Assembly: GCF_037042905.1 (NCBI RefSeq)
Contig: NC_087251.1
Coordinates: 16,306,001-16,370,000 of the forward strand
Length of the DNA stretch: 64,000 bases
Origin: Lytechinus pictus
Lineage: Eukaryota
Reading direction: 5' to 3'
Below, piece by piece: positions 4,368 to 26,299 of this stretch (positions are counted from its first letter, which is position 1; each line of letters starts with the position of its first letter). The translations under genes were made by a program, and so were the position numbers. The notes under the pieces are model-generated. The model did no database searches. It was not told the DNA's origin and saw nothing but the letters and a program-made list of their open reading frames with translations.

Positions 4368-6088
4368 CTAGTTCAACTCTGTATAGTCTGTCGAGTCAGT
4401 ATCACCGGTATCGTTAGCGTTGTTAAAATTTTCATCGGGTATTGACGAATACGCCTTGTCCATCATACTGTTTGCAGTAGACGCAGAGGCATGGGAGATA
4501 TCCCCTACCTGCGACCCACTTGCTTGACTTGATACCGATGCACGCGGATCTTTCATACTCATATACCCATCGTCGTGCCTAGATGACAACGAATTCGGAA
4601 AATTAGTCAAGAAAATGCTAGCTGCTGGCGAGATTTCCTCGCTGTTAGTCCTTTGCCGCCTGGGACGGTCGTAGTGTTGGGAAGTACTGCTATTGCTGCT
4701 GCTGACATTGCCCGTAGTCAAGGGCCTATTGTTCCTTGGGACTTCGTAGTATACCTTCAAGTCACCATGGGCACCCGAGAATGGATTAGTACCCGGGTTG
4801 CTCACACTGCGCCAGAGATGTTTCCGCTGGCGTCTTGATGGTACCAGGTCTGGGTGCAATTCAGAGTCTATGTGAATGCTGGTGTGCTTGGTACTAGCGC
4901 GATTGCTTCCCAGTGGCCGTAGCATTGGGAAGGAATCTACCTTCGGCTCTTCGCTGATACTCCCTTGGCGACTGATAGATATAAGAGCCGCCGTTGAACC
5001 ATTAGCCTGGCTCATACCTCCGCAAGACTCGCTGGTACTAGGTTGCCGACGGATGCCACTTGTAGTAGTGATGTCATGAGGTGCCGATTCACTCGCTGTT
5101 AGCATTCTGTCCCTAAAACTACCCTCTCCATTCCCAGACTGACCATTGCATCGATTTGCAGGAGACGTTGATTTCCCGTTCGTTGCACTTAGACTGCGAA
5201 ACATGGCACGATCAACGCGTCGTACTTTCCCGACACGCCACACACCGTCTGTGTTGTTAAGCGTCATGTACTCACGTTGTGATATCTGTGATCCATCGAG
5301 ATCAATATACCCATCTGGACCTACCAGCATGGAACTTAGCTGAAGCTGACCAAATGTTTTCCGCTCCGCCTCCAGTCGCCGAATCTTCCTTTTCAGATAA
5401 CACACGTAAACTGCTAGAATGGTAATGATAACAAAAGAAAACATTCCAATAATAATGGCAACTGTAAGGTAGTTACCACCTCGTGTCGGAGATTTCAGGT
5501 TTTGTCCAGTTGTTGGTTCCGTCTGAACTCCTGAAACAGTATGGTCATTTATGAAATTACTTACAACATCTACATTGTGATCTGATCTTGATATTTGCTG
5601 CAACTGGGGACCATAGGTGGTACACATTATCCCTGGTGGAACCGTAGAAGTTAGTCTCGCTGGAGTTCGGCGGACGCAGGAGTTGTTACGGAGAACCAAT
5701 CCAGCTGGCATCCCGTAGGCTTCGTTGCCCTCACCTGATGAATACCCATACACCAGAACAGAAAACGAATTGTACCCGCTGTATCTGTCTTCCAGGAAGT
5801 ACACTCCTGAAGGGTTGTGCACAAGACTGTGTTGCTTTATACAAAACTTTCTCTTCAGCATTTCCTCTGTCGTGTGAGAAGCATTTAAAAAGTTATCCTC
5901 CGGGAAGTGAAATATGCCATGAAAAAGGCTTGATTTTGCATTGCAGTCGATGACGATATTGATGTTATTAGTAAGTTCGGGGCCACTGGCGACAGAGATA
6001 GAAGGAATAAGAGCCTCACTTACGAATTGCTCAATCCCAGGGACAAGCATCATAAAGGGATCAGCTCCTGTTCCATCTACATTTCCTC
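4368..6088 (-). CDS. Terminal exon of an IgGFc-binding-domain type I membrane protein (end of domain, stalk, TM helix at ~5394-5472, 341-aa cytoplasmic tail)
   Basis: 561-aa ORF that extends upstream to the acceptor ttttctacgcag|GA GGA AAT. A phase-1 join with the previous exon gives MQFSKG-GNVDGTGADPFMMLVP. Domain-end motif VYGY...AYGMPAG; hydrophobic YLTVAIIIGMFSFVIITILAVYVCYL followed by KRKIRR; stop TAG at 4368. Confidence 0.9.
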
Positions 6089-6469
6089 CTGCGTAGAAAA
6101 GAAAAAAAATAGAATGAATTAATCAAAATCAGACTTATATTAATACTTTCAAAATTGTATTGCAAAAAAATGTACCCACAAAGCATGAGCGTCATACCAA
6201 TTTCAAATTAATGATACATTAACAAACATTTAACGAATAAATGCTGATCACGGTGATATAATATATATTGTCAAATTGTAGGTAATTATCATCTCCTGAC
6301 CCAGAAAACAACCTTTCGAATCATTGTCATCCTTTGAGAAATATTGTATTTTAGATATTTTTGCCATAAAGTAAGGACTCGTATCTTCTTACGTGCATAT
6401 TTCCAATCATGATGTTTCCATAACAATCAGTTTATCTCATTATACCGATGTCCCAATGTCTTTCCATAC

Positions 6470-7348
6470 CTTTACTAAACTGCATGACAAGGATGGGACT
6501 GTTGGCAACAATAGCTGTACTCGAATTCGATCCCACGTCCAGTTCCCTAAATTGCCCAGCGTTCAGTATGAAGTAAGAATCGGTTGTCGTTGTCCTCACG
6601 ACGGTCAAGTTCCTTGCTGCAATGACCCGGAAACGATCCCCGTGTGACCTTCCTTTCAGGGGTGACGTGATGAACTCCTTTTCCCAACTGCTGACGGGTG
6701 GAAGCTGCTCAACGAGGTGGTCGCAATACCGGTTATTCTTCGGCACATTGGCACATTTATTTCCTGACAAGACGGCAATGGGTTTATTTGATACAATGTG
6801 CGTACCGGTAAGGTCATAATCTTGATCAAGGCAGTGGAGAGTTTGAAGCTTCGTCAGTGGTACTTCTCTTCCCGAGTAAATAATTTGTCCATTGCAGACA
6901 GCATAGTTGTTAGGACGGAAGTTTATCCTGATGCGGGTATCATGGTCGGTACTGATCACCATGAACTGGGAGCCACGATCGTCTCTCTTGATGCGGGTTG
7001 CTAACTCGTAGGTTACGACATAATATTCGTAGCCGAGAGCGTCCGTCGGAAGAGCTAGGAAGGAATCCATGGAGTTGCCTCTATCAATGCCGTACACGCT
7101 CACCTCATGGTCTGCCTTGACAACGATGGCTTCTGATCCTGCAATTGCAGCGTTCATAAGGTCCAATGACTGGACTGGTTGGTAAGGGGTGATGTTTAAC
7201 GTGTAATTGCCTTGTTTGGTATAGATGACCACCGAGGTGCTCCGTCTTGAACCAACGATGTAGATATGAGGGCTGACATCAGGCATCATCGCTTCCAGGA
7301 AACCAATCACAAACTCTGTTCCCATGTGATCTCGGACGGCACAAGGAT
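6470..7348 (-). CDS. Internal exon encoding an IgGFc-binding protein N-terminal (FCGBP-like) domain
   Basis: Acceptor ttcttgacag|AT CCT TGT and donor AAA G|gtatgg. Family motifs GTEFVIGF, VSVYG, DSFLALPTDALGYEYYVV, DLTGTHIVSNKPIAVLSGNKCANVP, CDHLVEQLPPVSSW, DRFRVIAA, PILVMQFSKG. Confidence 0.92.
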
Positions 7349-8543
7349 CTGTCAAGAACAATGAAATTATAAACCAGTGACAGTTTCAAAGATAGTTATA
7401 CTGTAGAAAACAATCGTTTGTAGTGTAAGCCAATATAATGTACATGTAGGCCTATATGTACAAAATTATGCATGATTCCTCTTTTATGTTAAGATATGAC
7501 AAGATATGTAATTACCTCCCCACCCCACATACACACTTAATACTTGTCGACTTTTTGTTATCATGTAAACCACACTGAATGCAAGACAATTCCTCGAAAC
7601 CGTTCAAATTCTTCGATTTTCATCTTAACACATACATGACACAACGGGTTAGAAAGTACAACGTCCTTAATTGTTTTTTTTTTTCATTCTAAACTGCTTT
7701 GTGACAACCTTTCGTACCACGTGACTGCATTAACAAAACGATCTTTAACAAAGCCTGATTGAATTTATCCCCTTCTGTCGGGACTTATGATTTCCGTTCA
7801 TAAGTGACTAATCACATGGTTATTGCTTTTCTTTCAATCACCGTAGCACCTGAAATGCCATCGACATCATCACACCGTTGCGGTGTATACGACCCACCTG
7901 ACCACCAGTTGTGGCTTTTCTCTCCCCTTTTGCCCTTGGTCATCCCATGGATTTACGTCAGAATGGAAGCTGTCCCGCATTCAAATTAATTTTCATGAAT
8001 TGATATTCTGATATTTCACGAAATAGGAAAAGTGAAAAATAAGTAAGTTTTCTAAAAGGAAAAGAAGAGATGAGAGGACGATGCAGGGTTGATGTAGGGG
8101 TATATATTAGCGAATAGTTATACCAAAAAGTGCAACATTAAAAAGTTACTGTTTCTCTTGTGATCCGGATGAAAATTGCTCGTTATTTGCTCATATATAC
8201 TGTATTTATTCATAGTATTGTGCATTCTATTTAGTGCTTAGCCAAATCTGATTCCAAGTATATAAAAACACGAAGCACTTTGTAAAAGCCTTTGATCAAA
8301 GACTTTCTTTTGCTGAATGATCAACCATATAAAATTGCTCTTATATATTTATGAAGAAAAATTCAAAATGAATGGTTGAATCGTTTCTAGATTGGATTTT
8401 ATCCCAATCCGATAAGCTTAAGAGAGTCCCTTGAGTTCTTCCAACTCAATTAATTCTCTTCAAGTATATTTCATATTCAAATGAATAAAGAACATCCGTA
8501 TTTTTAATCTTTGTTATAACCAATAATAATAATCAATCGTTTT

Positions 8544-8836
8544 CACTAGCGTACCTACGGGGGGGGGGGCAGTCTGCCCCCCCCCCCCTGACGAGCCACG
8601 ACCCATGCAAAGGACGTATCCCTGCCCCCCTGACGAGCTTGAAGACCTTTTTTTTTTTTTTTTGCTTGTCAATTTGTTTTCTGTAACGAAATCATTTATT
8701 TGTGATTGAAGACCTTTATTTATTTATCTTTTTTTTGCTTGTCAATTTTTTTTCTGTTACGAAATCCGTTATTTGTGATTGAAGACCTTTTTTTTTTTTG
8801 CCCCCCCCCCTATGGAAAATCCTAGGTACGCCACTG
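8544..8836. mobile_element. hAT-type MITE with G/C strings and internal T-rich direct repeats
   Basis: TIRs CACTAGCGTACCTA / TAGGTACGCCACTG. 8-bp TSD ATCGTTTT / ATCGCTTT (7/8). Three internal TTGAAGACCTTT units. Confidence 0.8.
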
Positions 8837-8882
8837 ATCGCTTTGAAGTATTAAATAGAACATCAATATAAAGTGGTAGGGG

Positions 8883-8999
8883 CAGTAGCGTACCGTGAAC
8901 CGCAGGAGACAAAGCATTGGGGGGGGGGGCAGTGCATTGTCTGTGAACAATGCTTTGCCCCCCAATGCTTTGTCTCCTCCGAGTCACGGTACGCTACTG
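8883..8999. mobile_element. 117-bp hairpin hAT-type MITE
   Basis: TIR CAGTAGCGTACCGTGA / TCACGGTACGCTACTG, and the element is almost entirely palindromic. Perfect 8-bp TSD GGTAGGGG at 8875-8882 and 9000-9007. Confidence 0.88.
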
Positions 9000-11338
9000 G
9001 GTAGGGGCATGCTTCAATGTAGAATCCCTTTATTATTTTGTAAAGAGTTGCGACATACAGGCATATTGCATTTCTGGCTCCAAAACGCCATTCGATTGAT
9101 TCGAATGATTACTTTCTTTAAAGATAAGCTTGCAAGATTCCGTACAGTGGATACAAAATAGCACTTATGTCATGAGTATAGATATATTCTTCAACGGAGT
9201 TAATTTTGCCCTCAGTGGGGACGTACCCGCCAAATACTTGCATATGAGAGGGCGCGATGGAAATGGGTAAGATTGCGACCCCCTTGTCAACCCTTACCAC
9301 GCTCCCAACGCTGTTTTCTTTGACGTAGGAACATTAATACATCCTTTCCGTTTCGAGGCCACGATGGTAATGAATTGGGGAAGTACTTGTATTTCCCCCT
9401 CTTTAAATCATTGGTATATGGATAATACCCCATTGCCCATGCATGAGGGGATTTTAATCCTTAGCATGTAATGGTTCTTATATACAGGACATCCATATCA
9501 TAACCAAACCAGCTGGGTTGTATTCTAAGTGAACTTAGATCCTCATTACATCACAATTAATTGAATATCCGTTGTATATATATCCAAAGTTAACAATCCA
9601 CCGTTGCACTTGGCAGTGATATCCAATCTTAATTGTTCTAAGTTGCCATATCGATCAACTACTTTCCGGTGTCGTCAAATTATTGTTTACGCAATCGTAA
9701 GGTTAAGGGAAGATCCGACTTCATGCAGTAATTGTTAAATGAGCAATAAACTTTGCAGATATACCATAACAGGATAATTTCTTCATTCTAAAATGAAGTG
9801 TGGCATCTTTAATTTATCGGTAACTTGCCTATCGATACTGGGTATGATTAAGTTGAGTCTGACACAGCTCTAATGAAAAGCTTCCGTACTTTTTCATTTT
9901 CCTCGAATTCCTGTCACGACTCACCAACACAACTGACATTATATAAGAAACCTCTCTATATAGCATGGTATATCTACTGCACTGACAGAGCTTTGAATTC
10001 ATGGTATGGATTATAAATGTTCTATTCAAGTTTTGTTATAAAATATCTTAGATGAAAAATATTTAGTCATGGAATTAATATAACTTTGAGGGGCTATCAG
10101 AACATAGTATAGTTAGGCAAAATGTACCTAGTACGGGTAGGCAAACTGTACCTGGTAACTGAAAATGTTATACCGCAAATGATAACTCTCAATATATTAT
10201 AATTATCATATTTTGGCCTCCTGCATATCATAGATTTAATGTATTAAAAATGTTAAGTTTTGTGTTTTTTTAATCAGCTTTTATCAGGCCTTTCACTGTA
10301 CTTATCATTTTTTTAATACTTTCCTGTTATTATTGCTACTGATGCTGCTGTAGTATAAAGGGTAGGCTCTTATGTTTGGTTTGTACTTTTCAACCTTGTG
10401 TCTATCGACAGACCCTGATGTAATACAGACACTTTTTATAAAATTCAAAAAATGAAATTTTCACTGAATCATTGCAAGGAGGGGCTGCATGGACTAAACT
10501 CGTATACAGGAACGTTTGCTCGCTCAAAAATCAAAATATTGCACGGAAACAGTCGCTAAACTCTGACCAGAACCGATAAAGCAGACTTCCCTTCCTTAAA
10601 AGAAGTGACGCTGTTGAAATCATCCAGTCTAGCTAGCTGCAGTCACAGGGTGCATACAGGGTCCTGGATTCAGGGTTCTGAAAGGTATATCCGATAAAGG
10701 GCTTTTAAGAGAGGAGTCAAAACAAGCACGCTTCCTCTAATGGTGCAACGACCTGGCATCCAAACCAGAAACAAACATATACTCAAGCATTTGTGATAAC
10801 CACAATATTTCAATGATATATCATCGAAGAATTTCTCATGCAAACCTGTGAAGAATCTCATAAGTCTCTATGTAATTCCTACGGACTTAATAAATACCAT
10901 TTTTGAAATGTAATATTGTTACAGTGTTAAATAGTTTCCATTCCAACATAATTATGTCATCGTCAGTCAAAAAGAACAGTTAAACTTAAAATGTTAAATA
11001 GAAAGAGAACAAATTGTCAGAAATTATAGATTAGAATATTGAATGTGCTATACAGTTAGGAAAACCTGTATTAACATTTTCAGTCATTGCAATTTGAGTT
11101 AATCAACATTTCTTTATTTTGGTCAATATATGATACTCTGGATCAAAAGAATAAACTATTCTTGAAGAGCAGTTCAATTATGCATGGTAAATAAGTTGCC
11201 ACGAGAACAATAAGTTAAACTCTGAAGTTTGATTTTGCAGTTGATGTAGATAATCTTTCCATCTTCATATACTGCATAGAGTATATTTCACATCCGTAAC
11301 AGTATTCTTTAACCTTCTTCGAGAATCTGTGTAAAAAA

Positions 11339-11850
11339 AGGGTTACTCCGGCCTGAAATCACCATGAAATTAATTGAAGAGGTAAATTTATTTGAAAAAG
11401 ATAATAAATACTCAAGTTTCATGGATAGGATCAAAATAATGAAGTTATGACATTCGGTAATCCAATTATGCATAACTCCAATTAAACATATGATATGCCT
11501 GTCATGAATTTGCAGCGATTTCGAATTTCATTGCATGAAATTATAATTTGAATATTCTGCTCCAAGAATTTGAATTCCAGATTGATTCCTCCAATAATGT
11601 GTAAGATCGCAAACGCTGTACATTACATAATGGAAGATAAAACAAGAAAATGGAAGTGGGGGATATGACTTTATCAGTTCACTCATTGCATGTACGTAAG
11701 AAATTCATTTCAACTGTTTATTTATTTATTTTTTTTTATTTATTTACAAATATGTCATATCTGATGACTTTCATAACTTTGTTCTTTTCAATTGAACTTC
11801 GATGATTTTATTCTCCTTCAGGGATATGCTTTTAGAACTTTAACTTCATT
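11339..11850. mobile_element. Degenerate copy of the TTAA-flanked MITE family
   Basis: Starts AAGGGTTACTCCGGCCTGAAA and shares internal words (GTGGGGGATATGAC, ATAACTT) with the 42217 and 60457 copies. Right end eroded; coordinates approximate. Confidence 0.4.
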
Positions 11851-12720
11851 TATCCAAATCGTGTTACTGACGGAATGACATTGGGTGTCATTGTTCGTTA
11901 AGACATGTAAGATGGGAGCGGTCTCTCCCCTGATCGCCGGTCATAGCACTTTCTAATGTTAGGATTATCTAATTTACTTAATTATTTAGTTACATCTTGA
12001 TGTTACGTAAGGAAAGTGTAGTAACTTTGGCATTATCCTAAATCTATTTCAATCTATTCCTTTCCATTCCATTTTTTTTTTCATTTTACCTCTAAGGACG
12101 GCAACTGCACACCGACTTTTTAAAACCACCATAAAAAGAAATGTAGCCCTGATTATTAGGATTTTAGTATGATATTTTTTGTATACCCCGCACTTTAAAC
12201 CCATTTTGTTTCAGCATTTTGTGATGGACACATAATTTGGCAATGAACATCTGGGAGTTAACACGTTTAATGATATCACAAATACTAAACCAAACCACAC
12301 CATTTAGTTTCGAGCTAGTTCTGAATCATCCCAACCACCATTTTGCATCCTTTTTCCTCTCTTTCTCGTTCACGAAATGCAATGTTATCACAACCAAAGA
12401 GCAATCACTCCATAAGAGTGTCGAATGCTAAAACCTCGAAATACCCAAAGAGTTCAAGTAAAAGAGACATACACTTGATAAATTATTCATTTCAATTCCC
12501 AAGGGAAAAGATATTTAGTTATAGGTTAAAAATTATCCGAAATGTAAAATGGATTTGTGCCTTAATTAAGAATGATTTGATATCAGATATTCTGAAGAAA
12601 TTACTCTCCAATTGTTGTTTCAAGTCTGTTTTGGTCACTGATTTCCACTATTGGTGATTTTGGGGTTACATGTATGAATCTGTGATGATGTACGTCTCTC
12701 TGCGTGAGAGGGTTTGTGAA

Positions 12721-12862
12721 GGAGGTACCGTGGCCGAGTGCTCTAAGAAGCTGATTACACAGAACGTCCAGGGTTCAATACACGACAGTTCAGTATGCCC
12801 TACATTGCAAAGCATTTCATCTAACGTGACTTTTTTTTTCTCACATCAGTTAAATAAAATGA
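12721..12862 (+). mobile_element. tRNA-derived SINE, degenerate
   Basis: GGAGGTACCGTGGCCGAGTGCTCTAAG (A-box-like) and GGTTCAATAC (B-box-like); similar to the copy at 43234. Confidence 0.55.
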
Positions 12863-15800
12863 TTTAGTAATTTTTCAACCACAGACACCACATTGAGCAT
12901 ATGTTTATGTTAGATGTCTATGCGAAACATTCGAGAATGGATGAAGGGAATCAGAAACGTATACAAGGATGTTTATTGTCTTAAATGCAGACATTGTTAC
13001 GCAACTAGATGACTGTTCGGACAAAAAAATCACGACATGCTACAAATCTACAATCAATGTTATTGTGAAACGTGTCTTGGTGTGTCCTCTGCCATATCCG
13101 ATCACTTTATCCTAGCCTCGGAAACCCCGATCAAGGTAGCGTTTTGGTTTTACCTTAATTCACCTTCACGACTTGCCTGAGCTTCTGAACACAATACACC
13201 GACTTCCTCCAACTCCGGATACATTACCTAGGAGATCCAGTCCGTTAAGGAGAGAGATTATCTCTTGCCCTCAGAGAATCGTGTACTGCTTTAAGACGAA
13301 TCGCAGACAGGACAGAAGGAAAGGGTATGAGCATACTCATGCAGAAGCCCTCAGATTTGAATGTGGTATTCAGTCTAATTTAAAAGCCTATTTTCATTTA
13401 AATGTGAAGATCGTGAATAATTAGATTTGGGGCATTTGTCTATTCACAAAGGTGCTGACGTATGGAATTTATCTTAAAATACACCCAAAGACACTTCATT
13501 AATTAACGATCAACAAAAGCAAGGGCTTCCAGAAGATGAAAACAAACTTAATCGTCTGTTGGTCCATAGGTCAAGTGGTTGGCCGTTAAGACCTGTTGAT
13601 GAAATAGACATGGACAAATTCAAGCCTTTCAAACTAAATTGTTTGCCAAATTTTCATAAGATATGACTTAATGTTTTTCTTAATCTGGAGGAGAGACACC
13701 AAGCTTGCATTTATATAAGACATTAATTGATATATTTTCTAGTAGTCAATCATCCCTATTTCCTGAAGAAAAAGAAAATTATATCAATCGACCGGCGTCA
13801 ATGATAAAATTTAGTCTATGCACCGAATGATATGCAGTGATGAGTCTGACCATCTAGCAACAAGCTCGTAAAAGAGTAAGGTTGAAATTTCGTCACCCTC
13901 CTGACTCTTATCTTTAGTGTATCGATGTATCCTATTGTTGTCACGACCAGGAAGTCATTCGTCTCGAGCTGCTGAAGCAATGTCAGTGGTGTATCCGACC
14001 TGACGCATTCTGTTGTTTAATTGTCCTTACTGCACAGACAACATGAAGGACGGAATGATTCGAGAGGCCAATGCCATATCCGATCCACCGTGGTAATGTT
14101 GTAATGAACAGTCTATCGTTTTATTGCGATCAGGGTCTCTTTATCGATTGACATTGTAGATTATTTTTATTTTGCGGCCATCCTGACCGTAAAAGTGCAG
14201 TTAAGATGCCCTAGCCATAGCAATTGTTAAGCTAATTTTGTTTCATGGGTCATTCATTTTGGAAGTGGTGATAGCCAGGTGATGTATTGTTTTAATCCTG
14301 AGGTCAGTGTGGTCTTCCATTGTCCTCTATGATTTTGTTAAAATCAATTATGAAATTCTTTTTTTAATCGATTACAAAGGCCATTCAAACATAGGGAGTG
14401 AAAACGAGTTTATTAAAATCATTGTGATCGTGATTATTGGCAGTCAGCTAATGATTTATTTTAATAAAACATCTCTTAAATCGTTCCTCTTCTGGCATGA
14501 GTTGTAATTATCGCAAGGATGATGCATGAGCTATAACCGATGTTCTTTCAGAGTTTTCTTCTTTTAATGGCTCCTTGTTAATATATCGACATATTCCCTC
14601 TTGATAAATTTGCGCCAACAAGTTTTCACGTTGACAAATCATATGCTGTATATCTAAAAAGAAATAATATAGGTCACGTATGGGTTGTGCCCAGTGTCAT
14701 TATATCTTAACTGATACCGAGGTAATCAATTGAACATAAATATCCTGTCACCTGGATGGTGGTCTACACTTTTTTTGTCGTGGAATTACTTTTTATGCTG
14801 GTCTTCGTTAACGAAGTCTTCCTTGATATATAGGGATACATTGTGTCTATACTTCAGAGTAGGCTCTCTAAGCACTCTGTATAAGTGATTCTGTTAAGCT
14901 TAGTCTCTAGGCAGAAACACGACACTGTTTAGATGTAGAATATAGGCTTACAAGCTAAAAAGTTTTTGTAAGTGTTATACAACTATAGCGGATGGCTTGT
15001 GTATGTTGTTATTGGATTTACCTTTAATGTTGGTTTGAGAATTTACACATCCCTTTTGGTTATGGCTACTCAATGCAGTTCATGGATTTGACCTATCCTT
15101 TGAATGCAATACTCATCTTTAAATGGAACATTCTTTAAGGCAAGAATAAAATGTTCTCTCTTGACAAGCAACAAAATACATATTTTGGCTATGAATATAC
15201 TCTCAACCTGAGAATAATCCCGTCAGAGAGGAAAGAGTAAAAAAAATATATATATATTTCTACATTTCTCCCGACAACGAAATTTCTAAAACTGCAGGAC
15301 TCTAGCCAAGATAGGCATTCTATGGATCACAAGATCTCCCCTTTGCTGCTATGGCAAAGCCAACATGTGTTTGTTGCTGTTTTCTATGTAAATAACCGTG
15401 TAGCTTCCTCTAGCAATCACCGATGTACTGCAACATACGTTCAAAAGAACACCAAGCACAAGGGAGGTTTATCTTCTTGGGCCCTGACAACGGACAGAGA
15501 AATCATTCCCAATTTACAAAATATTCAATAAAACTTATCAAAATACCTCAAATTGCAATGGAAACTTAAATAATGCCTGTGATAAATTAAAAAAAAACCA
15601 TGGTACCAAAAACACCCCCATTCCGACCACTAAGCAAGTATTTGATATCTACGAATGCCAAGTTTCACTCGACAAAGCTCGTGCAAGCCGAGACTCGGGT
15701 TTTTTCTTCTTGTCATGACGTACACTAGGGTTTTGCGGTTCATCTTAAGGTGATTTAGCTCGTTTAAATCTACTAACAGTCAAATTGGAACCCTCAAATT

Positions 15801-16370
15801 ATTATCTAACACTAACTGAAGGCAATACGTGGCAACACTAATTGCGAGTCTAGACAACAAAAACACGCTTATTTCTAATTACAGTATCACTAGGTTAAAC
15901 CTGATAACTTTGAAACACAAGATGTGATTTCAGGTAATCCTGATGTATAATTCTAGGTGTCGTGCTCACAATATAAATACATGGAGAGTTTTCATTAAAC
16001 TATGGTAGCTCCTTGACAGGCTTGATTTAAATCGTATGTCCATTCTATTTTCTCGACGTCGAAAGGAAGGTGGGTTAAATTTTTCACTTCCCCGACAACA
16101 TATATAAACTTGGCAAGGGCTCTGCAAACAGTTGATTCTTTCATTCTGATAAAGCATATCACAAAGCAAAAATGTTGCAGTACTCAAGATGAGGGATGGC
16201 AACGTAAAGGCAGCTGTTTGAAATATATGTTCTGTGCTAGTTTTGATGACTCGAGTTAGCAATATTGTCTTCATCTTCATGCGTTGCTTGCTCATCCTTC
16301 CATTGTAACACATACCATATTTTTCAAGGAATGACAGATACAATATTTGATCAAATCGGTGTTACAAAAC

Positions 16371-16700
16371 TGAATTTGAATTTTAAATTTGAATTTATTG
16401 GTTTATTCAACCTCTAATTTATCAATATTTCAAAGGACAAAGTGAAATACAATTCAATACTCTCACACTTTTCTCGCCCAACAAATCCAAACCTTTAAGG
16501 GTGACAGCGTCTACAGACCTTGGAAGAAAGAGTGATGTAAGAACAAAAGGCGAGCTGTGACTTCAAGGTTTAAGCATCATCAACAGTGACAAAAGCTATA
16601 GCCCACAGCGGTAGGACAGTTTGGCGGATTTCCAAGCTTAATTCCTTCTAGGTTAACTCTGATAAATACCAAATTACAAAAAACGAATTCACTTCTAAAA
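16371..16700 (-). mobile_element. LINE (CR1/L2/Crack-like) 3' end remnant
   Basis: The minus strand ends in AATAAA plus a degenerate (ATTCAA)n tail, preceded by a residual EGIKAWKS reading that resembles the G-K-WN C-terminal motif. Approximate limits. Confidence 0.3.
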
Positions 16701-17748
16701 TTTGGCGGGAAAAGGGGTGACACGGCACCAACTTACAGCTACCCGGTACCAACTATACTCTCACATAATGTATGGAGGAAATGCTAATTAAAATACACGA
16801 CAGGGAAATTGTAACGGGTTAAAAGATGTATACAGTAGGCACTTGTCATGATTCCTATGGTAGACTTATAAAGACAGATGTGGTAGAGAATAATTACAAA
16901 ACATATTAATTTATGTATAAAGTTAAGTTTAGATTATGAAAATACAGGTATCCAATATGACTTGAGTCTATACTTTCCAGTAGATACGGTTACAACCTTC
17001 GTGAATATCATGTATGATACTGCGAAGATTCTTTGCATCAGTTTCTGATTTACACGAATGTAAAAGGAAACGGCTCCTTAATACAAACGGTTAAGGCAGT
17101 GTGAGCACGGATGTTTGCAGAAACCTACGGGAACTGCAACATTAAAAGAGTCTTTCCATTGCCTTCCATTGCAGTTCATCTGCTGACTCAACACATCGAC
17201 ACTTTTTACCGCAAGTGATTGGTATGGTTTTCTCATGTTAAAGCTCACAGTGACTTTTCTTAACCATGAGAAGGGTTTTACCGTTCACGTAACTTGGAAC
17301 GCCACCGATTCTTTAGCAGTGGTGACGTTGCCTAATACATCCACAGGAGCCGCACATGCGATACGGTTGATGAACGTGAGTTGGCTAGTGTCCAACTCTG
17401 GGGTGAGCATCGCTGTCTTCTGAAGATTGCAGCACAGCAGCACAGAATCTCATTCTCAGCACAGTCCTTGGACTATATCTTTCAGTGCAGTCCTTAGAAT
17501 ATATATCTTTCTTTGGTTACAGATCAGGCTACATGTATTAAACGAATATGCAAGAGGAGTCCAGGTTCTGGTGATAAGGATTAAGACTAGTCATAGATGG
17601 ATATGCAGAATCATATCGTTGTTGTTGAGGTATCCACAAAGTAGCAAGACACCAATTAATGAACTTTGGAGAATACCAAATGACTGTGGTATCAGACAGA
17701 CGTTTGCGAATATAAGTATGTAATGCACATCTATATTCTGGTTAAGAA

Positions 17749-17888
17749 CATAGGCGGGGGGTCCTGTCCCCCCAAAAAAAATTGTTGATAACCTTTTTTC
17801 TTTTTTTTTGCTTGTCAATTTTTTTACCTGTATCCATCCCAAAATTTCAGGTGGACCCCCCTAAATTTTTTGACTTCCGACGCGAATG
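17749..17888. mobile_element. Short hAT-type G-string MITE
   Basis: Termini CATAGGCG...CGCGAATG. Perfect 8-bp TSD GTTAAGAA at 17741-17748 and 17889-17896. Confidence 0.75.
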
Positions 17889-18852
17889 GTTAAGAAGAAC
17901 TATAAAACATATTTACGCAACACAACAAACAACTAAATAAAGTAATAAACTGCATAAAAGCAAAACCAAATATTCAAAATAATTATGCCCTATGATAAGC
18001 CTGACTTCACTTTATTTTCGTTGTATTGTATCATAACACTTTTGCTTTTTTATGTTTTGTTTATGGCAAAATAAAGAAATTCTCGGATCGGATTAAGTTG
18101 CATAGTGCAGTCCCATACCGAAATCCCGGGTTGTTCTGTTGGAGCATTTGTGTATTTTTTTTAAATTCACGTTCAATCAGCGTTGGTCTTGAAATTATTA
18201 CCTAAACATTCTACCTAAACGAACGCATTTTTTTTTCTTTTCCCACAAATGAACTTGAGCCTTACTAAGGTAGAACACGTTGTGAAGGAAGTGTGTGTAC
18301 AGATGGTGAACATTAACTGGCAGAACTCCAATTCCTTCCATTTCCCTTACATTCGTGGAGGGGGGCAAACCGGAGGTGTGCAATAGAAGCCCGTGATCAC
18401 GATAGGGGTGAAAATGTAACATACTTTGGACATGTAGGTATTCTTAACTTTTTAGACCTTCTCTTGTTTGACCTTCATTTATCTACAGCTGAATATGTTT
18501 AGAGGATATCTTGTAATTAGCCTATCCCTAGCATGACGGTTTCGGTTTCAGTTTCAAGTCCAACTTGTCGCGTCAAAATTCATATGTACAATAATTTCAT
18601 TTTATTTTATTCTAATTCATCTAACAATAAACAAAGATATTATTCATGGTAGATTTAATCATTACAAATGTAGCAGTAAAAAGATAGGGGAGATTGTTTT
18701 ATATGCATATAAACCGTATTATACAATTCGGACTCCTTTTGATAGTAATTTTACAGTTATACTGCGCTGCAAAAGCTCATGATATGGTTGAAATAGTTCA
18801 TTGAAAAAAATATGTACTTTAATTTTTTAGCTAAAGAAATATTTAAGATGAC

Positions 18853-18990
18853 AAATTCAATTCAATTCAATTTATTGACCATTAAAAATACATCAAAATA
18901 TTTACAAAAATAACATGATACAAACAAACTAATTACTGATTCTAAAGGCAATATATATTCAGGAGTTAAGAGAACCACATGCAATTTTTC
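18853..18990 (-). mobile_element. LINE 3' tail remnant
   Basis: Plus strand (AATTC)3 AATTTATT reads as AATAAA + (TTGAA)n on the minus strand, the simple-repeat tail typical of CR1/L2-group elements. Confidence 0.35.
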
Positions 18991-21900
18991 ACTGAGAGAA
19001 TATCCACACAATCTGAGTTATAAAAACAGTAGGCCGTATCTCAGGGAATTCGCGTTAAAAAACGATGTAATTAAGATACGTTCATTTGGTTTGAGTTCAA
19101 TTCAATTATTGTTTAAAATATTCAAAATTAAGATACATAATGATTAGTTTAGTGAAGAATTGGTCAGTCGAATGGATTTCCCAAATAGCTTATTCTTGTT
19201 GTGCCATCCAATAATGACAAAAAATATTAAATAAAGATATGCATGTACAAATATTGTTTCATGACAGAGTTTGGGCCAAAATGAGTTGCAAGAAATACAT
19301 AATTTTTTTTCTTTAAAAATCAAACTTTCATTGACAGTGTAATTAATCATTGTGATTAATAGTCCAATTCATTTAATACTCATACAGACCATCACCCCTT
19401 CAAAGAGATAAAAGGGGGAGACTGACAGATAAAGAGGGATAGAGAGAGAGAAAAAAACCAAATCATTGAACCAGAAGAAGTGTGGAAGTCATAGGGTGAC
19501 ACAAACATATACACACCCACACAAACATAAAAATAACGGGCAATATATCGCATGAAATCGAGTTTGAGGGGTGAGTGTGCGTGTGTGAGTGACAAAGAGT
19601 GATGGTTTGTGGGAAGACATGACTGTTTGTGTGGGAACGGGTGTCAGTGTGCCAGTGTGCGGGTGTGTTAGGCATGGTCACTTACTACCACTTACACACA
19701 AACACGAGAATATACAGTGAACAGAAGACGTCCTCGTTTGCGCACTAATACAATGGTGCAAATCATATGATTTTGCATATAGAGGTAAAGTAAACAAAAT
19801 AATAATAAATTCAGAAATATATAAGATGTCCTTTATTGAATATAAAATTTCATATGGTCCTTGGTTAATCAGTTTCTTACTTACTTGAGTTAAGTCTTCA
19901 ATACTTTTTTTCTGAAAATAAGTATTGTCCTTGATTCACATCTAAACTTTTGTTGGATGAGGGTGTGGTGTGTATAGGAAGTGGGTTTGGTGGAGAGGGG
20001 GGGGGGGGCGACCGATTGAAGGGAGATAGATTAATAAAGTATTACTTTTGGTTCTTTTCCACTCGTAAGAATTTTCATATTCATTGAATAAAAGATTCTT
20101 AAAAAATATCAAACAATAAGAATAAATTGAGATTATATAACATATACAATTTTCGCATTTCTGAAGTAGGTCAGGCTGTTTTGTGGATTTGTTTCTTACA
20201 GCATGCCATACTAGGATATTGCATAATTTTTAATCACCATACAAATTCCAAAGGAGCACAATATTCTATTAAAAAATGCACGCATTACTGAAACTTTCCT
20301 TCAAATTCTGGTTCTTTCGCAGTGATAAATCTGATAACAAATATTATTTACTAACAGATGTTTTTTTCCCCTCGATCCTGATATACACGTGCCTCGACGT
20401 GCGTCTAATGAGGTATCGGCAAACATTGCATAAAGGCAAAACAGCGACACAGCACTTTTGATTCATAACCCAGCCGTCCTCTACCGCGAAAAGCGAGGTA
20501 TCCGAAAATTGAATCGAATGAGAAATTGAATGTGATTAGCTGAGAGGAATGATTGATTAAGATTGCCTGTCAATGAGATCATTGCAAGTACAGACACACT
20601 ATCATTTCATTGAGAACTTCAGTCATGCTCGCGTGTCAATATCTCAATTGATTCCTCAGCGTTCATCTTTCGTGCTTCGAAAGATCATTTATAAAAAGAA
20701 AATCTACAATATACGCTTTTAGACTATAAAAAGAATCAACATCATATTAGTGAGAATACTGAACTTTTTCATTCGCAAAATTTTAGTTCGGAATAAATCA
20801 AATCCAAGAACATAATAACATTATAAAGTTGATAACATTAGAAAACAATCATTTGATTTAATGACCTAATCTATTTGTGGATCATCTATTACAATCGTTT
20901 CATATATTAAATCCAATTTGAGACATTTGGAGTGGGTTTAACCCTCTCCTTTTCCCCATCCATGGAATTTAAGACAATCCGTTCAATTAAAATATTTTTA
21001 AATCTTAGTTGCATGAAGTGACTCCTTCCGCTCCTGAAAATATTGTAGGTAAAGTTATGAAAAGTAGTATAAAGCAACCATAATATATACCGACCGATAT
21101 AATTCTCAACAACCAAAGCCAAGGTAAACATGCAACTTAATCTCTTATTATTTTGAAGGAAATTATATATTTTGAAAGCAACAAAACAGATCTAATCAAA
21201 TACGATCCTAAAAGATTATTTTTTGGGTCATAGTGGTAGAAAGTAAACCATATATAACGTCATTTGAGCAAAGTGCTAATTTCCATAATGTCCCTGTTTT
21301 TTTAAAGGTATTTTGAAGAGATAAATTTAAACGAACAAAGTTGTCAACCAGAGAGTGCTCCCATTGCATGTAGCAAAAGTTATTGAATTTTCATCTTTCA
21401 CACATCGTACAATGTAAACAAAAGGATTTAGTAAACTTTACCCAATATTGGTTTGAAAGGAAACATGCATGTTTGTTGGGTGAAATATTAGGTAAAAGTC
21501 TGTCCCATAGGGATGTTATCACCCAAAGTTTAGTAAAAATTTACACAGCACTTTTAACCCAATATTGATTAACCTCTTTTTTTTTAATAAAGTACAAGGG
21601 TTAACGACCAAAGTTTACACTCTCTAATTAACTATGTTGAAGACAAAGACTTTTACCTTATTCTTTAGATGTCAATGTTTGGTTTGGTCTGTCAAATTTG
21701 AGTTCTCCATGAATATTATTAGTAGTTTGTCCGACCCAAGAGGAAGCGGGAAACCCTGGGTCGCCGGTTTCACTTTTAACCCTGCACTTGCATCCCCTTA
21801 ACCATTAACTCCTGTTATATCGATCGTTTATTACGTCGCAAAATTAAGGGGCTGACGTTATTGAGATATTAGTAGAATGGGCGGCAGGTTTCAAAGCTAT

Positions 21901-23197
21901 AATTAACAAAAACAATATTTTATATGCGATACACATCCAAATGAACGCATGAATTAGTTTGCCAGATTCTACTTTCCTGTACTTAGATCCCTAATTTGTA
22001 AGCATATACGTGTATCTGGCCTTCGTACGTTGTCCTTTAGTACCCTATGACTTATTGACACGCCATACAACCAGCAATTGTATTCAAGATATGTATTCTT
22101 ATTGAAATGAATGTAAGGTGGAAATAAAAAAGGAAAAACTCAAAGAAGAAAAAATTTACATCTAAATTTCAAGCTAAGACGTCCCTGCCACTGATGATGG
22201 CTGGGCCCACAGATATTTGGCGTTATTAGTATATATAACTTTATGGCTGGGCCATGGCAATGTTTGGTCTTTAATTGGTTGTCCGTGGCCTTTCATTCAG
22301 CCCATGCTATTGTTTGTCCGACCGGAGCCAATTGCAAAAAGAGTTGTCTTTGAACCCAACTCAAGGAATCGAGCGCAAACCTTATGTACCCAATTTTGAT
22401 TGGTTTAAAATCAAGTTGCGATCGATGTTCAGAGTTGTGTTTGATCTCATCTCCTTATGCAATGAGCCTCTGATGACACACTGTCTAGTCTGAAATTTCC
22501 TTTCGAATTACTGTAATCGGACTTTTCTTGTAGACTCTTTTCTTGTAGCGATTCTTTATAATAACACCGTTCCTTTAAGAATTATTCAATCATGATCCAC
22601 CCTTGAGTTTTTGTTTTATCTGATTGACCTTAATTACTACCTATTGATTAAAATTTGTTTCATGCATAGCATGAAAATTTAACAACTTGTTTCTGTCGTC
22701 TAGGATGTGCATATACAGTATTTACTAATATAATTATTGCGAGTGTCCAATAGGTCATGTTTATGGTATGAGTGTGTGCGAATGTGTGTATTAACATCAT
22801 ACAAACCAAAATTTGCATTGATACGACCCCCTTCCCACCCTCCTCCTTCTCTTATTCTTCCTCTCTCTATCCCCCTCTCTATACCTTTTATTCTCATGAT
22901 GAGAGTTTTAAACTCGAGACTTTAAAGTTGACATTATCTCATGGAGAGTAATTTGATTTCAACAAGGCTATGTTTAAAAGAAACCCATGAATAGTGGATA
23001 TTGCCTTATGTGACAATATCCTGTTATATTTCCGATAACCCTGTCCTGCGCTGCCCGAATTCTTTAAAGGGAAGAGAAGTCATTATTGGTGCAAGCTGTG
23101 TTAAGAAAGTAGATTGAATAAATAATGTCGCTTAGAATATAACCTATCAGTAAAACTCAATGATCCCGAATGTACAAATATGTCGCATATTGGATAA

Positions 23198-23447
23198 CAT
23201 GGCCGTACGCATTGAGGGAGGGGGCAAGGGGCAGTTGCCTCCCGGAAATTTTGACAACTTACTTTTTTACTGAAAATTTCTACAAAATTCACCAAAAGTA
23301 TGCACGAAATCCTTCTATTTCACTTTACAAAATGCAAAAGCGCCAAAATGACAAGCCTGGTTGCTTCGCTCCCTCGCTATAGAGTTTATTTTTTTGAAAA
23401 AGTTTACGCCCCCCCCCCCCAGCAAAAAAATTCTGCGTACGGCTATA
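23198..23447. mobile_element. hAT-type G-string MITE
   Basis: TIR CATGGCCGTACGCA / TGCGTACGGCTATA. 8-bp TSD TTGGATAA / TTGGAGAA (7/8). Internal C12 string. Confidence 0.78.
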
Positions 23448-25364
23448 TTGGAGAATGTTCATGTCCGATAGGTTTGGGAACTAATACCTACGAATCTTCG
23501 ATGAATTATAATCAATCGAACTTCAGTATTCGTTTGAATTACAAACAATAAAACAATATATGAAAAAGATGGGTCCATCTGTAATGATTTTTACTATAGA
23601 TTTTGTTTTTAATTCTGGTAAACAATCTCCTTGAACTCATCAGCATAATACATTCTTAACATTTGTTCCAAAATATAGAATAGTTTTTAAGGAGGGTGTG
23701 TCACAAGTTTATTCTTTACCCTCGCATTAAAATGTTGTTGAAAGTTATTCACACAATTATAACTTCTGTAAACAACATGTGTGTGTTATAATCAGATTAA
23801 GCCTTCCTATTACCATCTATAGTAATGGAATAAAAAAATTCTGAAACTCAAATATATTTGCGATTTAGAAGTATTTAATGAAACCATATCGTGAAGGTTT
23901 TTTTTTCTTATTTTTAAATTTTGTCTAGCGTCCTCTTGAAGGATGTTAACATTAGAGCTTCCGTAGTTGTCAACTTGTCAATGTCCTTTGCGTTGTCTTG
24001 TGTTGCATCGTTCCATTGTCAAAACTGTGACTTTTTTCTCCTCCATAAATGGATCACTATCCTGTAATTTTTATCATATTGCCATGGTTTCCGATCGGGA
24101 AGACATTAAGTGATGGGCATATTAAAGGTTAGATTGTTACACCTCATTCCCATTGTCGTACGATCCGTTACGAACAGCACCATTGGCCTTTCGTAACTGA
24201 TCGCGAACATGTATGAACTATTCAATACGATTGCCTCGACTGAACTGATACGATGTTATACGTTCTGATACGATCATTACGATTACTTCACGATTAAAAC
24301 CACCGTTTCAATCGTGACAGTTCGAACTACATGTAAGTATTAAGGTCAGGTATTTCATATGATTGTTACTTTGGTACCACGGAGAATTTTGTACATACGA
24401 ACAATCACAAAATAAACAGTTTCAATATTTTCGCTAGTTTAGGAAAGATGAGCGATCATGAGTTTGTAGTCATAAAGTTTAATAAATGTATGATGACGAG
24501 ATTGTCTATATGCATGAGTGATTTAATAACAAATTGCATAAAAGGATATTTGTTTATCCCCATATATTTACCTTAAAACTAAGTTTTTACAACAGTGTGT
24601 CTTTTGAGGCTGATTTGCTCTCATTTCTCTACTCTTTGTCTTTATGATTTGTTATGTTTTACTCAATGTCGAAACTGACAAATACTGTTCGTTATAAGTG
24701 AGAATCAACCTTAACCTGAATTTAAATTCTTTGAAAAACCGTTTTAAGTTAAAAATTATTCAATAAGATGATGAAACAGCTTCTCTCTATATAAATAGAC
24801 CCAAAAAATCTAATTATTGAGTGGAGTGCAACCTACTATATCAAAATGATCTGTGATAAATGACAAAACTTTTGAATTCAAAGCCAAAGAAAGTTCAACG
24901 TTTATCGTATAAGAAACCCCTTCCAAGTTACGTCCTTTAAAAACTAGGCAGCACTGGCTGACATGTCGCATTTCTCGTAGAATGAGGGCAATTCATGTCT
25001 GACAGCATAATTCTATGTTTGCAATTAGCGCCCACTAGTCTTCCTTGGATAATCTTGACTTGCAGTAGTCTCCCGAATAACGATGGAAATAGCAATTTGG
25101 CGGAAGAAACTTTAACAGCAAATTATGGACATTGGCAATCAACGCATAGAGAACGTACCCGCTGAATGCAAAATCAACCGCTTTAACGTCGGAAACGTCA
25201 AATTCTCCAATATGGCAATAAAAAGATACTATATGGTTTCTTCTAGTATATAGTTTTATTAGAACGATTATTCGCAATAACTTTTTTTTTTACAAAAAAG
25301 AGAAATCTGCCCTTGCAGTATTATTAGCAGAAGATACACCAAAAAGGGGGAATGTTTAAAGTAC

Positions 25365-25544
25365 TAGTAGTAGTGACTGTGGCAAAAGAAGCGACAGTGG
25401 TAGCGGTCATGGTGGTGGTGGTGGTAGACGTGTAGCATCATCAGAATCAATAGCAGTCGGCAGAAGTAACAGTAGTGTTAACTTGTGTTGTAGTAGTGGT
25501 AGTGATAAATGTAATAGAAGTAGTAGTAATGGTAGTAGTAGTAA

Positions 25545-25600
<56 letters not shown>

Positions 25601-25663
25601 TAGCAGCAGTAGCAGTAGCAGCAATAGTAGTATATAGTAGTAGTAGTAGTAGTAGTAGTAGTC

Positions 25664-25707
<44 letters not shown>

Positions 25708-25740
25708 GGTGGTGACGGTGGTACCGTAGAAGTAGTTGAA
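25365..25740. repeat. Compound (TAG)n microsatellite with (GGT)n and (GCA) variants
   Basis: Long pure AGT runs at ~25545-25600 and ~25636-25698 with degenerate flanks. Confidence 0.97.
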
Positions 25741-26299
25741 GTAATAACAGGCCTATATAAGCAGCAATAAAAACAGCAGTCATCGCCATAACTGTAGCAT
25801 GAACATTCGTGAATATTTCGTCATTATACATTGAGTCGTGGAGTGTGAGACTGTGGGTGAGTGTAATTAAATTTTCACTAATGTTATCATATTGCATTCA
25901 TTATATAAGAACTACAACTCCAACATGAACACACCCAATATAAAGTTTATGTAAACACGCCATCGATTAGAGACAAAATGACACTTGACCAAAACGGAAC
26001 ACCTATAGATAACATTGTAATCATGAAGATGATATAGGTCTATGTTACCAGTGAATGAACTTCCATTCTATTATGACCAGCATGTGTCTATAACTTGCTG
26101 TGGATGATACCTAATACCAAAATATAGTCCTAGTCAGATCCGTTGTTTGTTCGTGACATGATTTATATTCAGTTATCTAAATATAGGCCTATCTTCCATG
26201 AATTAACAAATACATGACATTACTGAAATTAATAATTCAAAAGATGGTTTAACTGTTATGGGTAATGAAAAATTGTCTCCTTACCACTGGGGACTCCTG

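What the first reader, a model, noticed from the sequence alone, without database searches (positions are those of the whole stretch)
4368..7348. IgGFc-binding domain used as the ectodomain of a tyrosine-motif signalling receptor
Seen: the spliced exons give at least 866 aa, comprising an IgGFc-binding N-terminal domain, a Thr-rich stalk, one TM helix and a 341-aa Ser-rich, apparently non-catalytic tail. Known: this domain is best characterised in secreted mucus proteins such as FCGBP (followed by VWD/TIL repeats). Inference: here it is the ligand-binding head of a kinase-less surface receptor, an architecture I do not recognise as characterised. It may be an innate immune or adhesion receptor.
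Basis: partly seen in the sequence, partly recalled or inferred. Interest (0 to 1): 0.75.

Follow-up and report, generated by a model that had tools for sequence, protein, structure and literature searches.

The report
Echinoderm skeletal-cell membrane protein, FCGBP-like head
This is a real, transcribed sea-urchin gene for a single-pass membrane protein with an FCGBP-type outer domain and a long, strongly conserved, enzyme-free inner tail; its relatives in other echinoderms are found in skeleton-forming cells and inside the skeleton, which points to skeleton building rather than immunity.

Summary
Observation confirmed and extended. The window is Lytechinus pictus. The gene, LOC129265457, lies on the minus strand. 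Spliced transcript contigs confirm the 6470/6088 junction and one unbroken exon through the TM helix and tail. They also join exon 7348 to a signal-peptide exon about 19 kb upstream (26390-26285) that RefSeq misses. The full protein is 901 aa: signal peptide, a ~425-aa all-beta IgGFc_binding module (Pfam E 1e-59; AF2 pLDDT 82), a 68-aa disordered stalk, a TM helix (536-560) and a 341-aa disordered tail with no Pfam domain.

The gene is single-copy, and orthologues occur in all five echinoderm classes. The tail has no homologue outside echinoderms, yet it is as conserved as the folded head. Invariant motifs are DGYxxLDG[ST]Q-x4-R[DE]YMxLN (YxxL-x9-YxxL), RSxS and a C-terminal [DE]YTEL.

The S. 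purpuratus orthologue is Sp-Hypp_313 (Glean3_00752), found in the spicule-matrix proteome and listed as PMC-expressed. The Patiria orthologue is in the sea-star skeletal proteome. All mapped peptides are ectodomain. This favours a skeletogenic-cell surface protein over an immune receptor. Tyrosine signalling is plausible but untested, and the strict ITAM consensus is not met. TM-anchored IgGFc-N proteins with short tails also exist in amphioxus and Lingula. The same stretch was noted elsewhere in this scan (s1-294577).

The parts
26285..26390 (-). Coding exon 1: ATG at 26390 (context caccATGc, in-frame TAA 9 nt upstream), signal peptide (about aa 1-32), phase-1 donor G|GTAAGG after 26285. Missing from the RefSeq model.
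   Evidence: Found by script and read. The 30-nt loose end of the spliced contigs at 7349 matches uniquely at 26286-26315. The N-terminus is nearly identical to S. purpuratus P0127 and similar to Diadema P0004.
7349..26284 (-). Intron 1, about 18.9 kb. It contains a (TAT)n-type microsatellite that shows up as a poly-Tyr pseudo-ORF at 25478-25897.
6470..7348 (-). Coding exon 2 (aa 36-329): N-terminal beta-sandwich and the first two thirds of the IgGFc_binding module.
6089..6469 (-). Intron 2, 381 nt, GT..AG.
   Evidence: Skipped by contigs in X1 and X15 and by one raw RNA read in X23.
4368..6088 (-). Coding exon 3 (aa 329-901 plus stop at 4370-4368): end of the ectodomain, stalk, TM and the whole tail. 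It continues into a 3' UTR of at least 3.5 kb.
5673..7325 (-). Folded ectodomain (aa 44-467, spans intron 2). The Pfam IgGFc_binding hit covers aa 130-375 (7067..5949).
   Evidence: Pfam. AF2 model pLDDT 81.7, pTM 0.82, ordered over 1-424 of P0001. TM-score 0.70-0.75 to AFDB IgGFc-binding-N clusters over about 420 residues. Coordinates.
5469..5672 (-). Disordered, poorly conserved stalk (aa 468-535). Candidate shedding site.
   Evidence: pLDDT below 50. 53% identity to Diadema and unalignable in other classes.
5394..5468 (-). Transmembrane helix (aa 536-560).
   Evidence: Hydropathy peak 2.7. Conserved in all orthologues.
4371..5393 (-). Cytoplasmic tail (aa 561-901): 341 aa, disordered, no domain.
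   Evidence: AF2 pLDDT 43, pTM 0.13, only a juxtamembrane helix. No Pfam hit. Homologues only in echinoderms. Single copy in the genome.
5259..5315 (-). Invariant juxtamembrane double-tyrosine motif DGYIDL-x9-YMTL (Y589, Y602).
   Evidence: Invariant in all five echinoderm classes.
4794..4811 (-). RSVSNP. The RSxS core is invariant. The full RSxSxP pattern at this aligned position is seen in echinoids, asteroids and holothurians.
4554..4574 (-). DDGYMSM (a YxxM motif), conserved in every class except crinoids.
4371..4397 (-). C-terminal DSTDYTELN. [DE]YTEL followed by one last residue is invariant.

Best explanation
The locus is a three-coding-exon, single-copy gene (L. pictus LOC129265457; orthologue of S. 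purpuratus LOC100889419 = Sp-Hypp_313 = Glean3_00752) for a 901-aa type I membrane glycoprotein found in all echinoderm classes.

Shown: the exon structure and splicing; a signal-peptide-like N-terminus, the TM helix and hence the predicted topology; the head is one compact IgGFc-binding-N (FCGBP N-terminal) fold unit; the tail is disordered and has no catalytic domain, yet is as conserved as the head; the tail is restricted to echinoderms.

Shown for orthologues, from the literature: ectodomain peptides occur inside cleaned biomineral of sea urchin (spicule) and sea star. The S. purpuratus gene is on the PMC-expressed list and is T4-induced together with skeletogenic effector genes.

Inferred mechanism: the protein sits on the membrane of skeleton-forming cells with its beta-rich head facing the mineralisation or matrix space. 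There it binds a matrix, glycan or mineral-associated ligand; that ligand cannot be IgG. The flexible stalk allows proteolytic shedding, so the head becomes occluded in calcite. The tail acts as a platform of short linear motifs: YxxL-x9-YxxL next to the membrane, RSxS(xP), YxxM and a C-terminal YTEL. These would recruit phospho-dependent adaptors (SH2 or 14-3-3 type) and/or the clathrin sorting machinery, linking what the head binds to intracellular signalling or trafficking.
For: Gene model. Species and RefSeq identity. Domain and fold. Tail disordered and without a domain. Orthologues in echinoids, asteroids, ophiuroids, holothurians and crinoids, with invariant motifs. An exhaustive HMMER search with the tail found only 5 clusters, all from this echinoderm family. 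The tail is single copy although the genome has at least 27 other IgGFc-N loci. Identity to Diadema is 63% (head), 53% (stalk) and 74% (tail), so the disordered stalk serves as an internal control for drift. Skeletal link: Patiria PMI_013990 peptides LYIIGASAR and SFITSPLFGR map to the ectodomain of P0006. S. purpuratus Glean3_00752 / Sp-Hypp_313 peptides DYDLTGTHIVADKPIAVLSGNK and GSQFMVISTDHNTR map to the ectodomain of P0127. LOC100889419 is listed as 'Spicule Proteome' and 'PMC Expressed' and is the most T4-induced spicule-proteome gene. Mann et al. 2010 interpret TM proteins found in spicules as shed ectodomains.
Against: No expression or localisation data exist for the L. pictus gene itself; two 2026 RNA-seq runs gave only 2 and 6 reads. 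Spicule-proteome membership rests on 3 peptides at low abundance, and such proteomes contain bystanders. The PMC-expressed status is taken second-hand from a supplement that cites Rafiq et al. 2014. No phosphorylation, ligand or shedding data exist. The strict ITAM pattern is not met. No solved structure or characterised homologue defines what the IgGFc-N module binds.
Confidence: 0.55

Rival explanations
1. One reading: an innate-immune or phagocytic receptor of coelomocytes. The YxxL-x9-YxxL pair works as an ITAM/hemITAM-like switch that recruits a Syk-family kinase after the FCGBP-like head binds a microbe or opsonin.
For: A double YxxL with 9-residue spacing and a DGYxxL core, as in hemITAMs, is invariant across echinoderms. 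From general knowledge, the FCGBP family is linked to mucosal defence. The domain family is expanded in the genome, with at least 27 loci.
Against: This gene is single-copy, has 1:1 orthologues across about 500 Myr, and evolves slowly. From general knowledge, typical sea-urchin immune receptor families do not behave this way. The strict ITAM regex is not met, since the acidic residue is at -2 rather than -3. The only expression and protein evidence for orthologues is skeletal or PMC. The presence of a Syk-type kinase was not tested here.
Confidence: 0.12
2. A constitutively cycling endocytic or cargo receptor. The YxxL motifs are AP-2 type YxxPhi sorting signals, helped in echinoids by an NPF motif for EH-domain proteins. 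The protein carries a bound extracellular ligand or mineral precursor into or out of the cell, without phosphotyrosine signalling.
For: All three invariant tyrosines sit in YxxL contexts. NPF is present in echinoids. From general knowledge, skeletogenic cells rely heavily on endocytosis and vesicle traffic for calcium delivery.
Against: A sorting signal needs only 4-6 residues. Here about 25 contiguous residues around the tyrosines, and many further blocks over 341 aa, are conserved, which implies more partners than the sorting machinery. NPF is absent outside echinoids.
Confidence: 0.2
3. Essentially a matrix-protein precursor. The TM segment only delivers the head to the mineralisation front, where it is cleaved and built into the skeleton. 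The tail has no signalling role.
For: All five mapped MS peptides are ectodomain peptides. The stalk is disordered and variable, which suits cleavage. Mann et al. give the same reading for TM proteins in spicules.
Against: The tail is conserved more strongly than the head within echinoids (74% against 63%) and about equally across classes. That cannot be explained if the tail were dispensable.
Confidence: 0.1

Closest known systems
Sp-Hypp_313 / Glean3_00752 / LOC100889419 (S. purpuratus) and PMI_013990 (Patiria miniata): uncharacterised entries in echinoderm skeletal proteomes
   Same: Direct orthologues, with 91-93% identity for S. purpuratus. Same signal peptide, head, TM, tail and motifs.
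   Different: Nothing structural. They were only listed ('Ser-rich; transmembrane', 'uncharacterized'), and neither the domain nor the tail motifs were analysed.
FCGBP (IgGFc-binding protein) and invertebrate 'IgGFc-binding protein-like' mucin-type proteins
   Same: They share the N-terminal IgGFc_binding module by sequence (Pfam 202 bits) and by predicted fold.
   Different: FCGBP is secreted and continues with VWD/C8/TIL repeats (general knowledge). Here no such domains are present; instead there is a stalk, a TM helix and a 341-aa cytoplasmic tail. Echinoderms have no IgG, so the ligand must differ.
Membrane-anchored IgGFc-N proteins of amphioxus and Lingula (e.g. P0145, P0149, P0154, P0168), and the ophiuroid two-module protein P0014
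   Same: IgGFc-N head followed by one predicted TM helix.
   Different: Their tails are only 9-83 aa and are unrelated in sequence. None was found by the exhaustive tail search. All are predictions only.
Adhesion GPCRs with IgGFc-N ectodomains
   Same: The same module serves as the outward-facing part of a signalling membrane protein.
   Different: Those proteins have a GAIN/GPS domain and seven TM helices. This protein has one TM helix and a disordered tail.
ITAM/hemITAM receptors (e.g. Draper/CED-1-type phagocytic receptors, CLEC-2/Dectin-1 hemITAM); recalled from general knowledge
   Same: A kinase-less single-pass receptor with a conserved YxxL-x9-YxxL pair and a DGYxxL core.
   Different: The strict consensus is not met and there is no tri-acidic stretch. 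The ectodomain is unrelated. No evidence exists for phosphorylation or Syk recruitment. The resemblance concerns a possible mode of action, not family membership.

Membership tests
IgGFc_binding (PF17517 / FCGBP N-terminal domain) superfamily | Pfam HMM score above the gathering threshold | tested here: met
   202 bits against a cut-off of 25.6, E 1.4e-59. The first exon alone gives 180 bits.
IgGFc_binding (PF17517 / FCGBP N-terminal domain) superfamily | Same fold as other family members | tested here: met
   The AF2 model (pLDDT 82) matches AFDB IgGFc-binding-N clusters with TM 0.70-0.75 over about 420 residues, probability 1.0. No solved structure is available.
IgGFc_binding (PF17517 / FCGBP N-terminal domain) superfamily | Binding of IgG Fc | not testable with these tools
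   Biochemical property. Echinoderms lack IgG (general knowledge).
FCGBP / gel-forming mucin-like secreted proteins | VWD-C8-TIL repeat units after the N-terminal domain, and a secreted protein | tested here: not met
   No VWD, C8 or TIL hits. A TM helix and a cytoplasmic tail are present.
Echinoderm Sp-Hypp_313 orthogroup | Collinear full-length homology that includes the echinoderm-specific tail and its invariant motifs, in a single-copy gene | tested here: met
Echinoderm skeletal (biomineral-occluded) proteome | Peptides recovered from cleaned skeletal elements | tested here: inconclusive
   Met for the S. purpuratus and Patiria orthologues. No data for L. pictus.
ITAM-bearing receptors | [DE]xxYxx[LI]-x6-12-Yxx[LI] in the cytoplasmic tail | tested here: not met
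   The strict pattern is absent in all 11 orthologues. The loose pattern Yxx[LI]-x9-Yxx[LI] is present in all (alignment).
ITAM-bearing receptors | Tyrosine phosphorylation and recruitment of a tandem-SH2 (Syk-type) kinase | not testable with these tools
   Needs phosphoproteomics or pull-downs.
hemITAM receptors | Single DEDGYxxL motif with a tri-acidic stretch, on a C-type lectin type II receptor | tested here: not met
   Only the DGYxxL core is present and is preceded by G-P/A/F/M. The topology is type I and the head is not a C-type lectin.
Catalytic receptors (receptor kinases, phosphatases, cyclases) | An enzymatic domain in the cytoplasmic part | tested here: not met
   No Pfam domain in 12 orthologous tails. 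The tail is predicted disordered.
Adhesion GPCRs with an IgGFc-N head | GAIN/GPS domain plus 7tm_2 | tested here: not met
   One TM helix only and no GPS or 7tm_2 hit. Compare P0017.

The most novel reading that the evidence does not exclude
Echinoderms evolved their own immunoreceptor-style signalling module for skeleton formation. An FCGBP-N head senses matrix or mineral at the surface of skeletogenic cells. On clustering, the invariant DGYxxL-x9-YxxL pair is phosphorylated and recruits tandem-SH2 kinases or adaptors, with 14-3-3 and PI3K-type sites further down the tail. This would control spicule growth through a previously unrecognised, phylum-specific receptor pathway in biomineralisation.
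Probability: 0.2. Interest if true: 0.8.

Novelty: new variant of a known kind. Interest (0 to 1): 0.5.

Why it matters
Many matrix proteins and transcription factors are known for echinoderm skeletogenesis, but few cell-surface receptors that connect the mineralisation space to the cell interior. This protein is conserved in every echinoderm class. It is physically recovered from skeletons of two classes and is reported as enriched in skeletogenic cells. Its 341-aa tail has a conservation pattern that strongly implies several binding partners. L. pictus is a genetically tractable urchin, so the protein is a concrete, testable candidate for such a receptor. The work also corrects the RefSeq model, which lacks the signal-peptide exon. 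Finally, it shows that the FCGBP N-terminal module, whose ligand and structure are unknown, is used repeatedly as a membrane-protein ectodomain in invertebrates.

Tried and rejected
- Foldseek against the PDB and Swiss-Prot AFDB gave only generic beta-sandwich matches with TM about 0.1.
- VIA-align matched only the first 96 residues, to TM1070-like sandwiches with Z 11.3. That says nothing about function.
- A PDB sequence search with the family profile found nothing.
- The ESM Atlas feature search with the tail gave no usable hit.
- tblastn with the Diadema N-terminus did not find exon 1. It was found by a script for ATG, a hydrophobic stretch and a phase-1 donor, then confirmed by contigs.
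- tRNA and bacterial promoter/terminator scans are irrelevant for this eukaryotic locus.
- Literature searches for IgGFc-binding with sea urchin, transmembrane, primary mesenchyme or skeletogenic, and for LOC129265457, SPU_000752 and Hypp_313, found no study of the protein.
- A check for a sea-urchin Syk kinase in the literature was inconclusive.
- The idea of a catalytic or folded tail domain was rejected.
- A close paralogue sharing the tail was rejected.
Full report
**1. What is in the sequence.**
The window is from Lytechinus pictus. The exon at 4371-6086 (minus strand) is 100% identical to RefSeq 'uncharacterized protein LOC129265457' (P0001, 858 aa). Two long minus-strand ORFs, 7361-6432 and 6053-4368, stand out at 45-52% GC against about 30-36% background. 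They are joined by a canonical phase-1 intron: donor after 6470, acceptor before 6088.

Reads and contigs were laid on 2000-7999. Spliced contigs from two studies (X1, 3979 nt; X15, 6162 nt) and one raw RNA read skip exactly this 381-nt intron. They run without further splicing through the TM segment, the tail and the stop codon into a 3' UTR of at least 3.5 kb. In the stranded raw-read runs the first mate lies on the plus strand, as expected for a minus-strand mRNA.

**2. A missed first exon.**
Exon 2 begins at an acceptor (7348) and has no signal peptide, and the RefSeq model simply starts at an internal Met. A script searching for an ATG, a hydrophobic stretch and a phase-1 donor found 26390-26285, with donor GTAAGG. 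The loose end that both spliced contigs carry beyond 7349 is the reverse complement of the last 30 nt of that exon and occurs only once in the window. The encoded N-terminus, MQYSGYIS..., is almost identical to the S. purpuratus orthologue and similar to the Diadema one. An in-frame TAA lies 9 nt upstream of the ATG.

The complete CDS is 2706 nt and encodes 901 aa:
- signal peptide, about aa 1-32;
- ectodomain to aa 535;
- TM helix, aa 536-560;
- tail, aa 561-901 (341 aa, 16.4% Ser, 8 Tyr).

**3. The head.**
Pfam finds only IgGFc_binding, with E 1.4e-59. An AlphaFold2 model built on 28 homologues is confident (pLDDT 81.7, pTM 0.82). It shows one all-beta unit over residues 1-424 of P0001, followed by a disordered 68-aa stalk. 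The whole ordered part superposes on AFDB 'IgGFc-binding protein N-terminal' clusters with TM 0.70-0.75. No solved structure exists for this module. Only the first about 96 residues resemble a known small sandwich, 1nc7, with Z 11.3. There are no VWD, C8 or TIL domains, so this is not an FCGBP-type mucin.

**4. The tail.**
No Pfam family matches any of 12 orthologous tails. AlphaFold2 predicts disorder (pLDDT 43, pTM 0.13) apart from a juxtamembrane helix. An exhaustive HMMER search of 1.84 billion representative proteins with the tail found only five clusters, all from this echinoderm family. The L. pictus genome holds the tail only once.

The tail is nevertheless as conserved as the folded head:

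| Comparison with L. pictus | Head | Stalk | Tail |
|---|---|---|---|
| Diadema | 63% | 53% | 74% |
| Other echinoderm classes | 38-47% | not alignable | 31-45% |

(All values.) The equally disordered stalk drifts freely and so serves as an internal control.

Residues invariant across all five classes form these motifs: DGY[IM]xLDG[ST]Q-x4-R[DE]YM[TSP]LN (two YxxL motifs nine residues apart), an RSxS core, and a C-terminal [DE]YTEL plus one residue. DDGYMSM, YY.VP[KR] and YDRPR are conserved in every class except crinoids. The strict ITAM pattern with an acidic residue at -3 is not met. The looser double YxxL and the DGYxxL core are met. The pattern indicates many constrained short linear motifs. 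Whether they are phosphotyrosine docking sites, sorting signals or both cannot be decided from sequence.

**5. Distribution.**
Full-length orthologues with the same order of parts occur in:
- echinoids: Lytechinus, Strongylocentrotus, Diadema;
- asteroids: Asterias, Acanthaster, Patiria;
- ophiuroids: Amphiura-like;
- holothurians: the Apostichopus cluster;
- crinoids: Anneissia, Antedon.

The genome has at least 27 other IgGFc-N loci at 25-39% identity, so the domain is widely used, but this gene has no close paralogue.

Outside echinoderms, IgGFc-N heads on a single predicted TM helix exist in amphioxus and Lingula, with tails of only 9-83 aa. The module also heads adhesion GPCRs. 'IgGFc-N as a membrane-protein ectodomain' is therefore not unique. 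The long conserved tail is the echinoderm-specific feature.

**6. What the orthologues are known for.**
No paper studies the protein, but it appears in data tables.
- Flores and Livingston 2017 (PMC5460417) list Patiria PMI_013990 in the sea-star skeletal proteome. They give XP_003728419 (LOC100889419) as its S. purpuratus counterpart, present in test and spine. The peptides LYIIGASAR and SFITSPLFGR lie in the ectodomain of the Patiria orthologue.
- The supplements of Mann et al. 2010 (PMC2909932) carry GSQFMVISTDHNTR and DYDLTGTHIVADKPIAVLSGNK, assigned to Glean3_00752 = Sp-Hypp_313. That entry is described as 'Ser-rich; transmembrane', with spicule '+' and test '(+)'. Both peptides lie in the ectodomain of P0127.
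- A 2023 study (PMC10250714) lists LOC100889419 under both 'Spicule Proteome' and 'PMC Expressed' (after Rafiq et al. 2014). It reports it as the most thyroxine-induced spicule-proteome gene.
- Mann et al. note that a third of spicule proteins are TM proteins represented only by ectodomain peptides, probably shed by metalloproteases.

**7. Interpretation.**
The best-supported reading is a surface protein of skeleton-forming cells. Its FCGBP-N head faces, and partly ends up in, the biomineral. Its tail couples it to intracellular partners. The immune-receptor idea rests only on motif resemblance and the family name. It fits poorly with single-copy, slow evolution and with the skeletal data. A pure matrix-precursor role does not explain the conservation of the tail. 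A pure sorting role does not explain how much of the tail is conserved.

The link to skeletogenesis is indirect for L. pictus itself, because the two raw RNA runs that were laid showed almost no reads. None of the proposed molecular interactions has been tested.

**8. Verdict.**
This is a new variant of a known kind, namely a known extracellular module on a single-pass membrane protein with a phylum-specific, motif-rich tail. Interest is moderate.

The same stretch was also noted elsewhere in this scan as an array of SH2-docking motifs (s1-294577). That note is not independent evidence.

Noticed in passing
window 26285-26390 (minus strand): The RefSeq model of LOC129265457 (858 aa) is truncated at the N-terminus. 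It starts at internal Met44 and lacks the signal-peptide exon, which spliced contigs and the S. purpuratus and Diadema orthologues support.
   Followed up: yes
window about 70-4367 (minus strand): Very long 3' UTR. The X15 contig continues about 1160 nt below position 2000. A separate X1 contig covers 2000-3787 and extends about 1930 nt further down, but is not joined to the coding contig across about 3790-3980.
   Followed up: partly
window 25478-25897: The poly-Tyr/His 'ORF' is a trinucleotide microsatellite inside intron 1, not a gene.
   Followed up: no
window 57141-57686 (minus strand): A 181-aa ORF that contains a signal-peptide-like stretch (MASHTAGRCVLVFLATMLVAAVDSAA...) followed by a Gly/Asn-rich segment. 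No Pfam hit even at E 10. It may be the first exon of a neighbouring secreted-protein gene.
   Followed up: partly
G000 genome-wide (e.g. C11:14.4-16.6 Mb, C1:16.5 Mb, C21, C3): At least 27 further loci encode IgGFc-N modules at 25-39% identity, several clustered on contig C11. The domain family is expanded in L. pictus.
   Followed up: partly
P0017 and P0014 (Amphiura filiformis): One brittle-star protein has two IgGFc-N modules followed by GPS and 7tm_2, making it an adhesion GPCR. Another has two IgGFc-N modules followed by one TM helix and a 54-aa tail.
   Followed up: partly
P0145, P0146, P0149, P0153, P0154, P0160-P0164 (Branchiostoma), P0168 (Lingula): Predicted single-pass, membrane-anchored IgGFc-N proteins with short tails of 9-83 aa in a cephalochordate and a brachiopod. 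All are annotated only as 'IgGFc-binding protein-like' or 'FCGBP'.
   Followed up: partly
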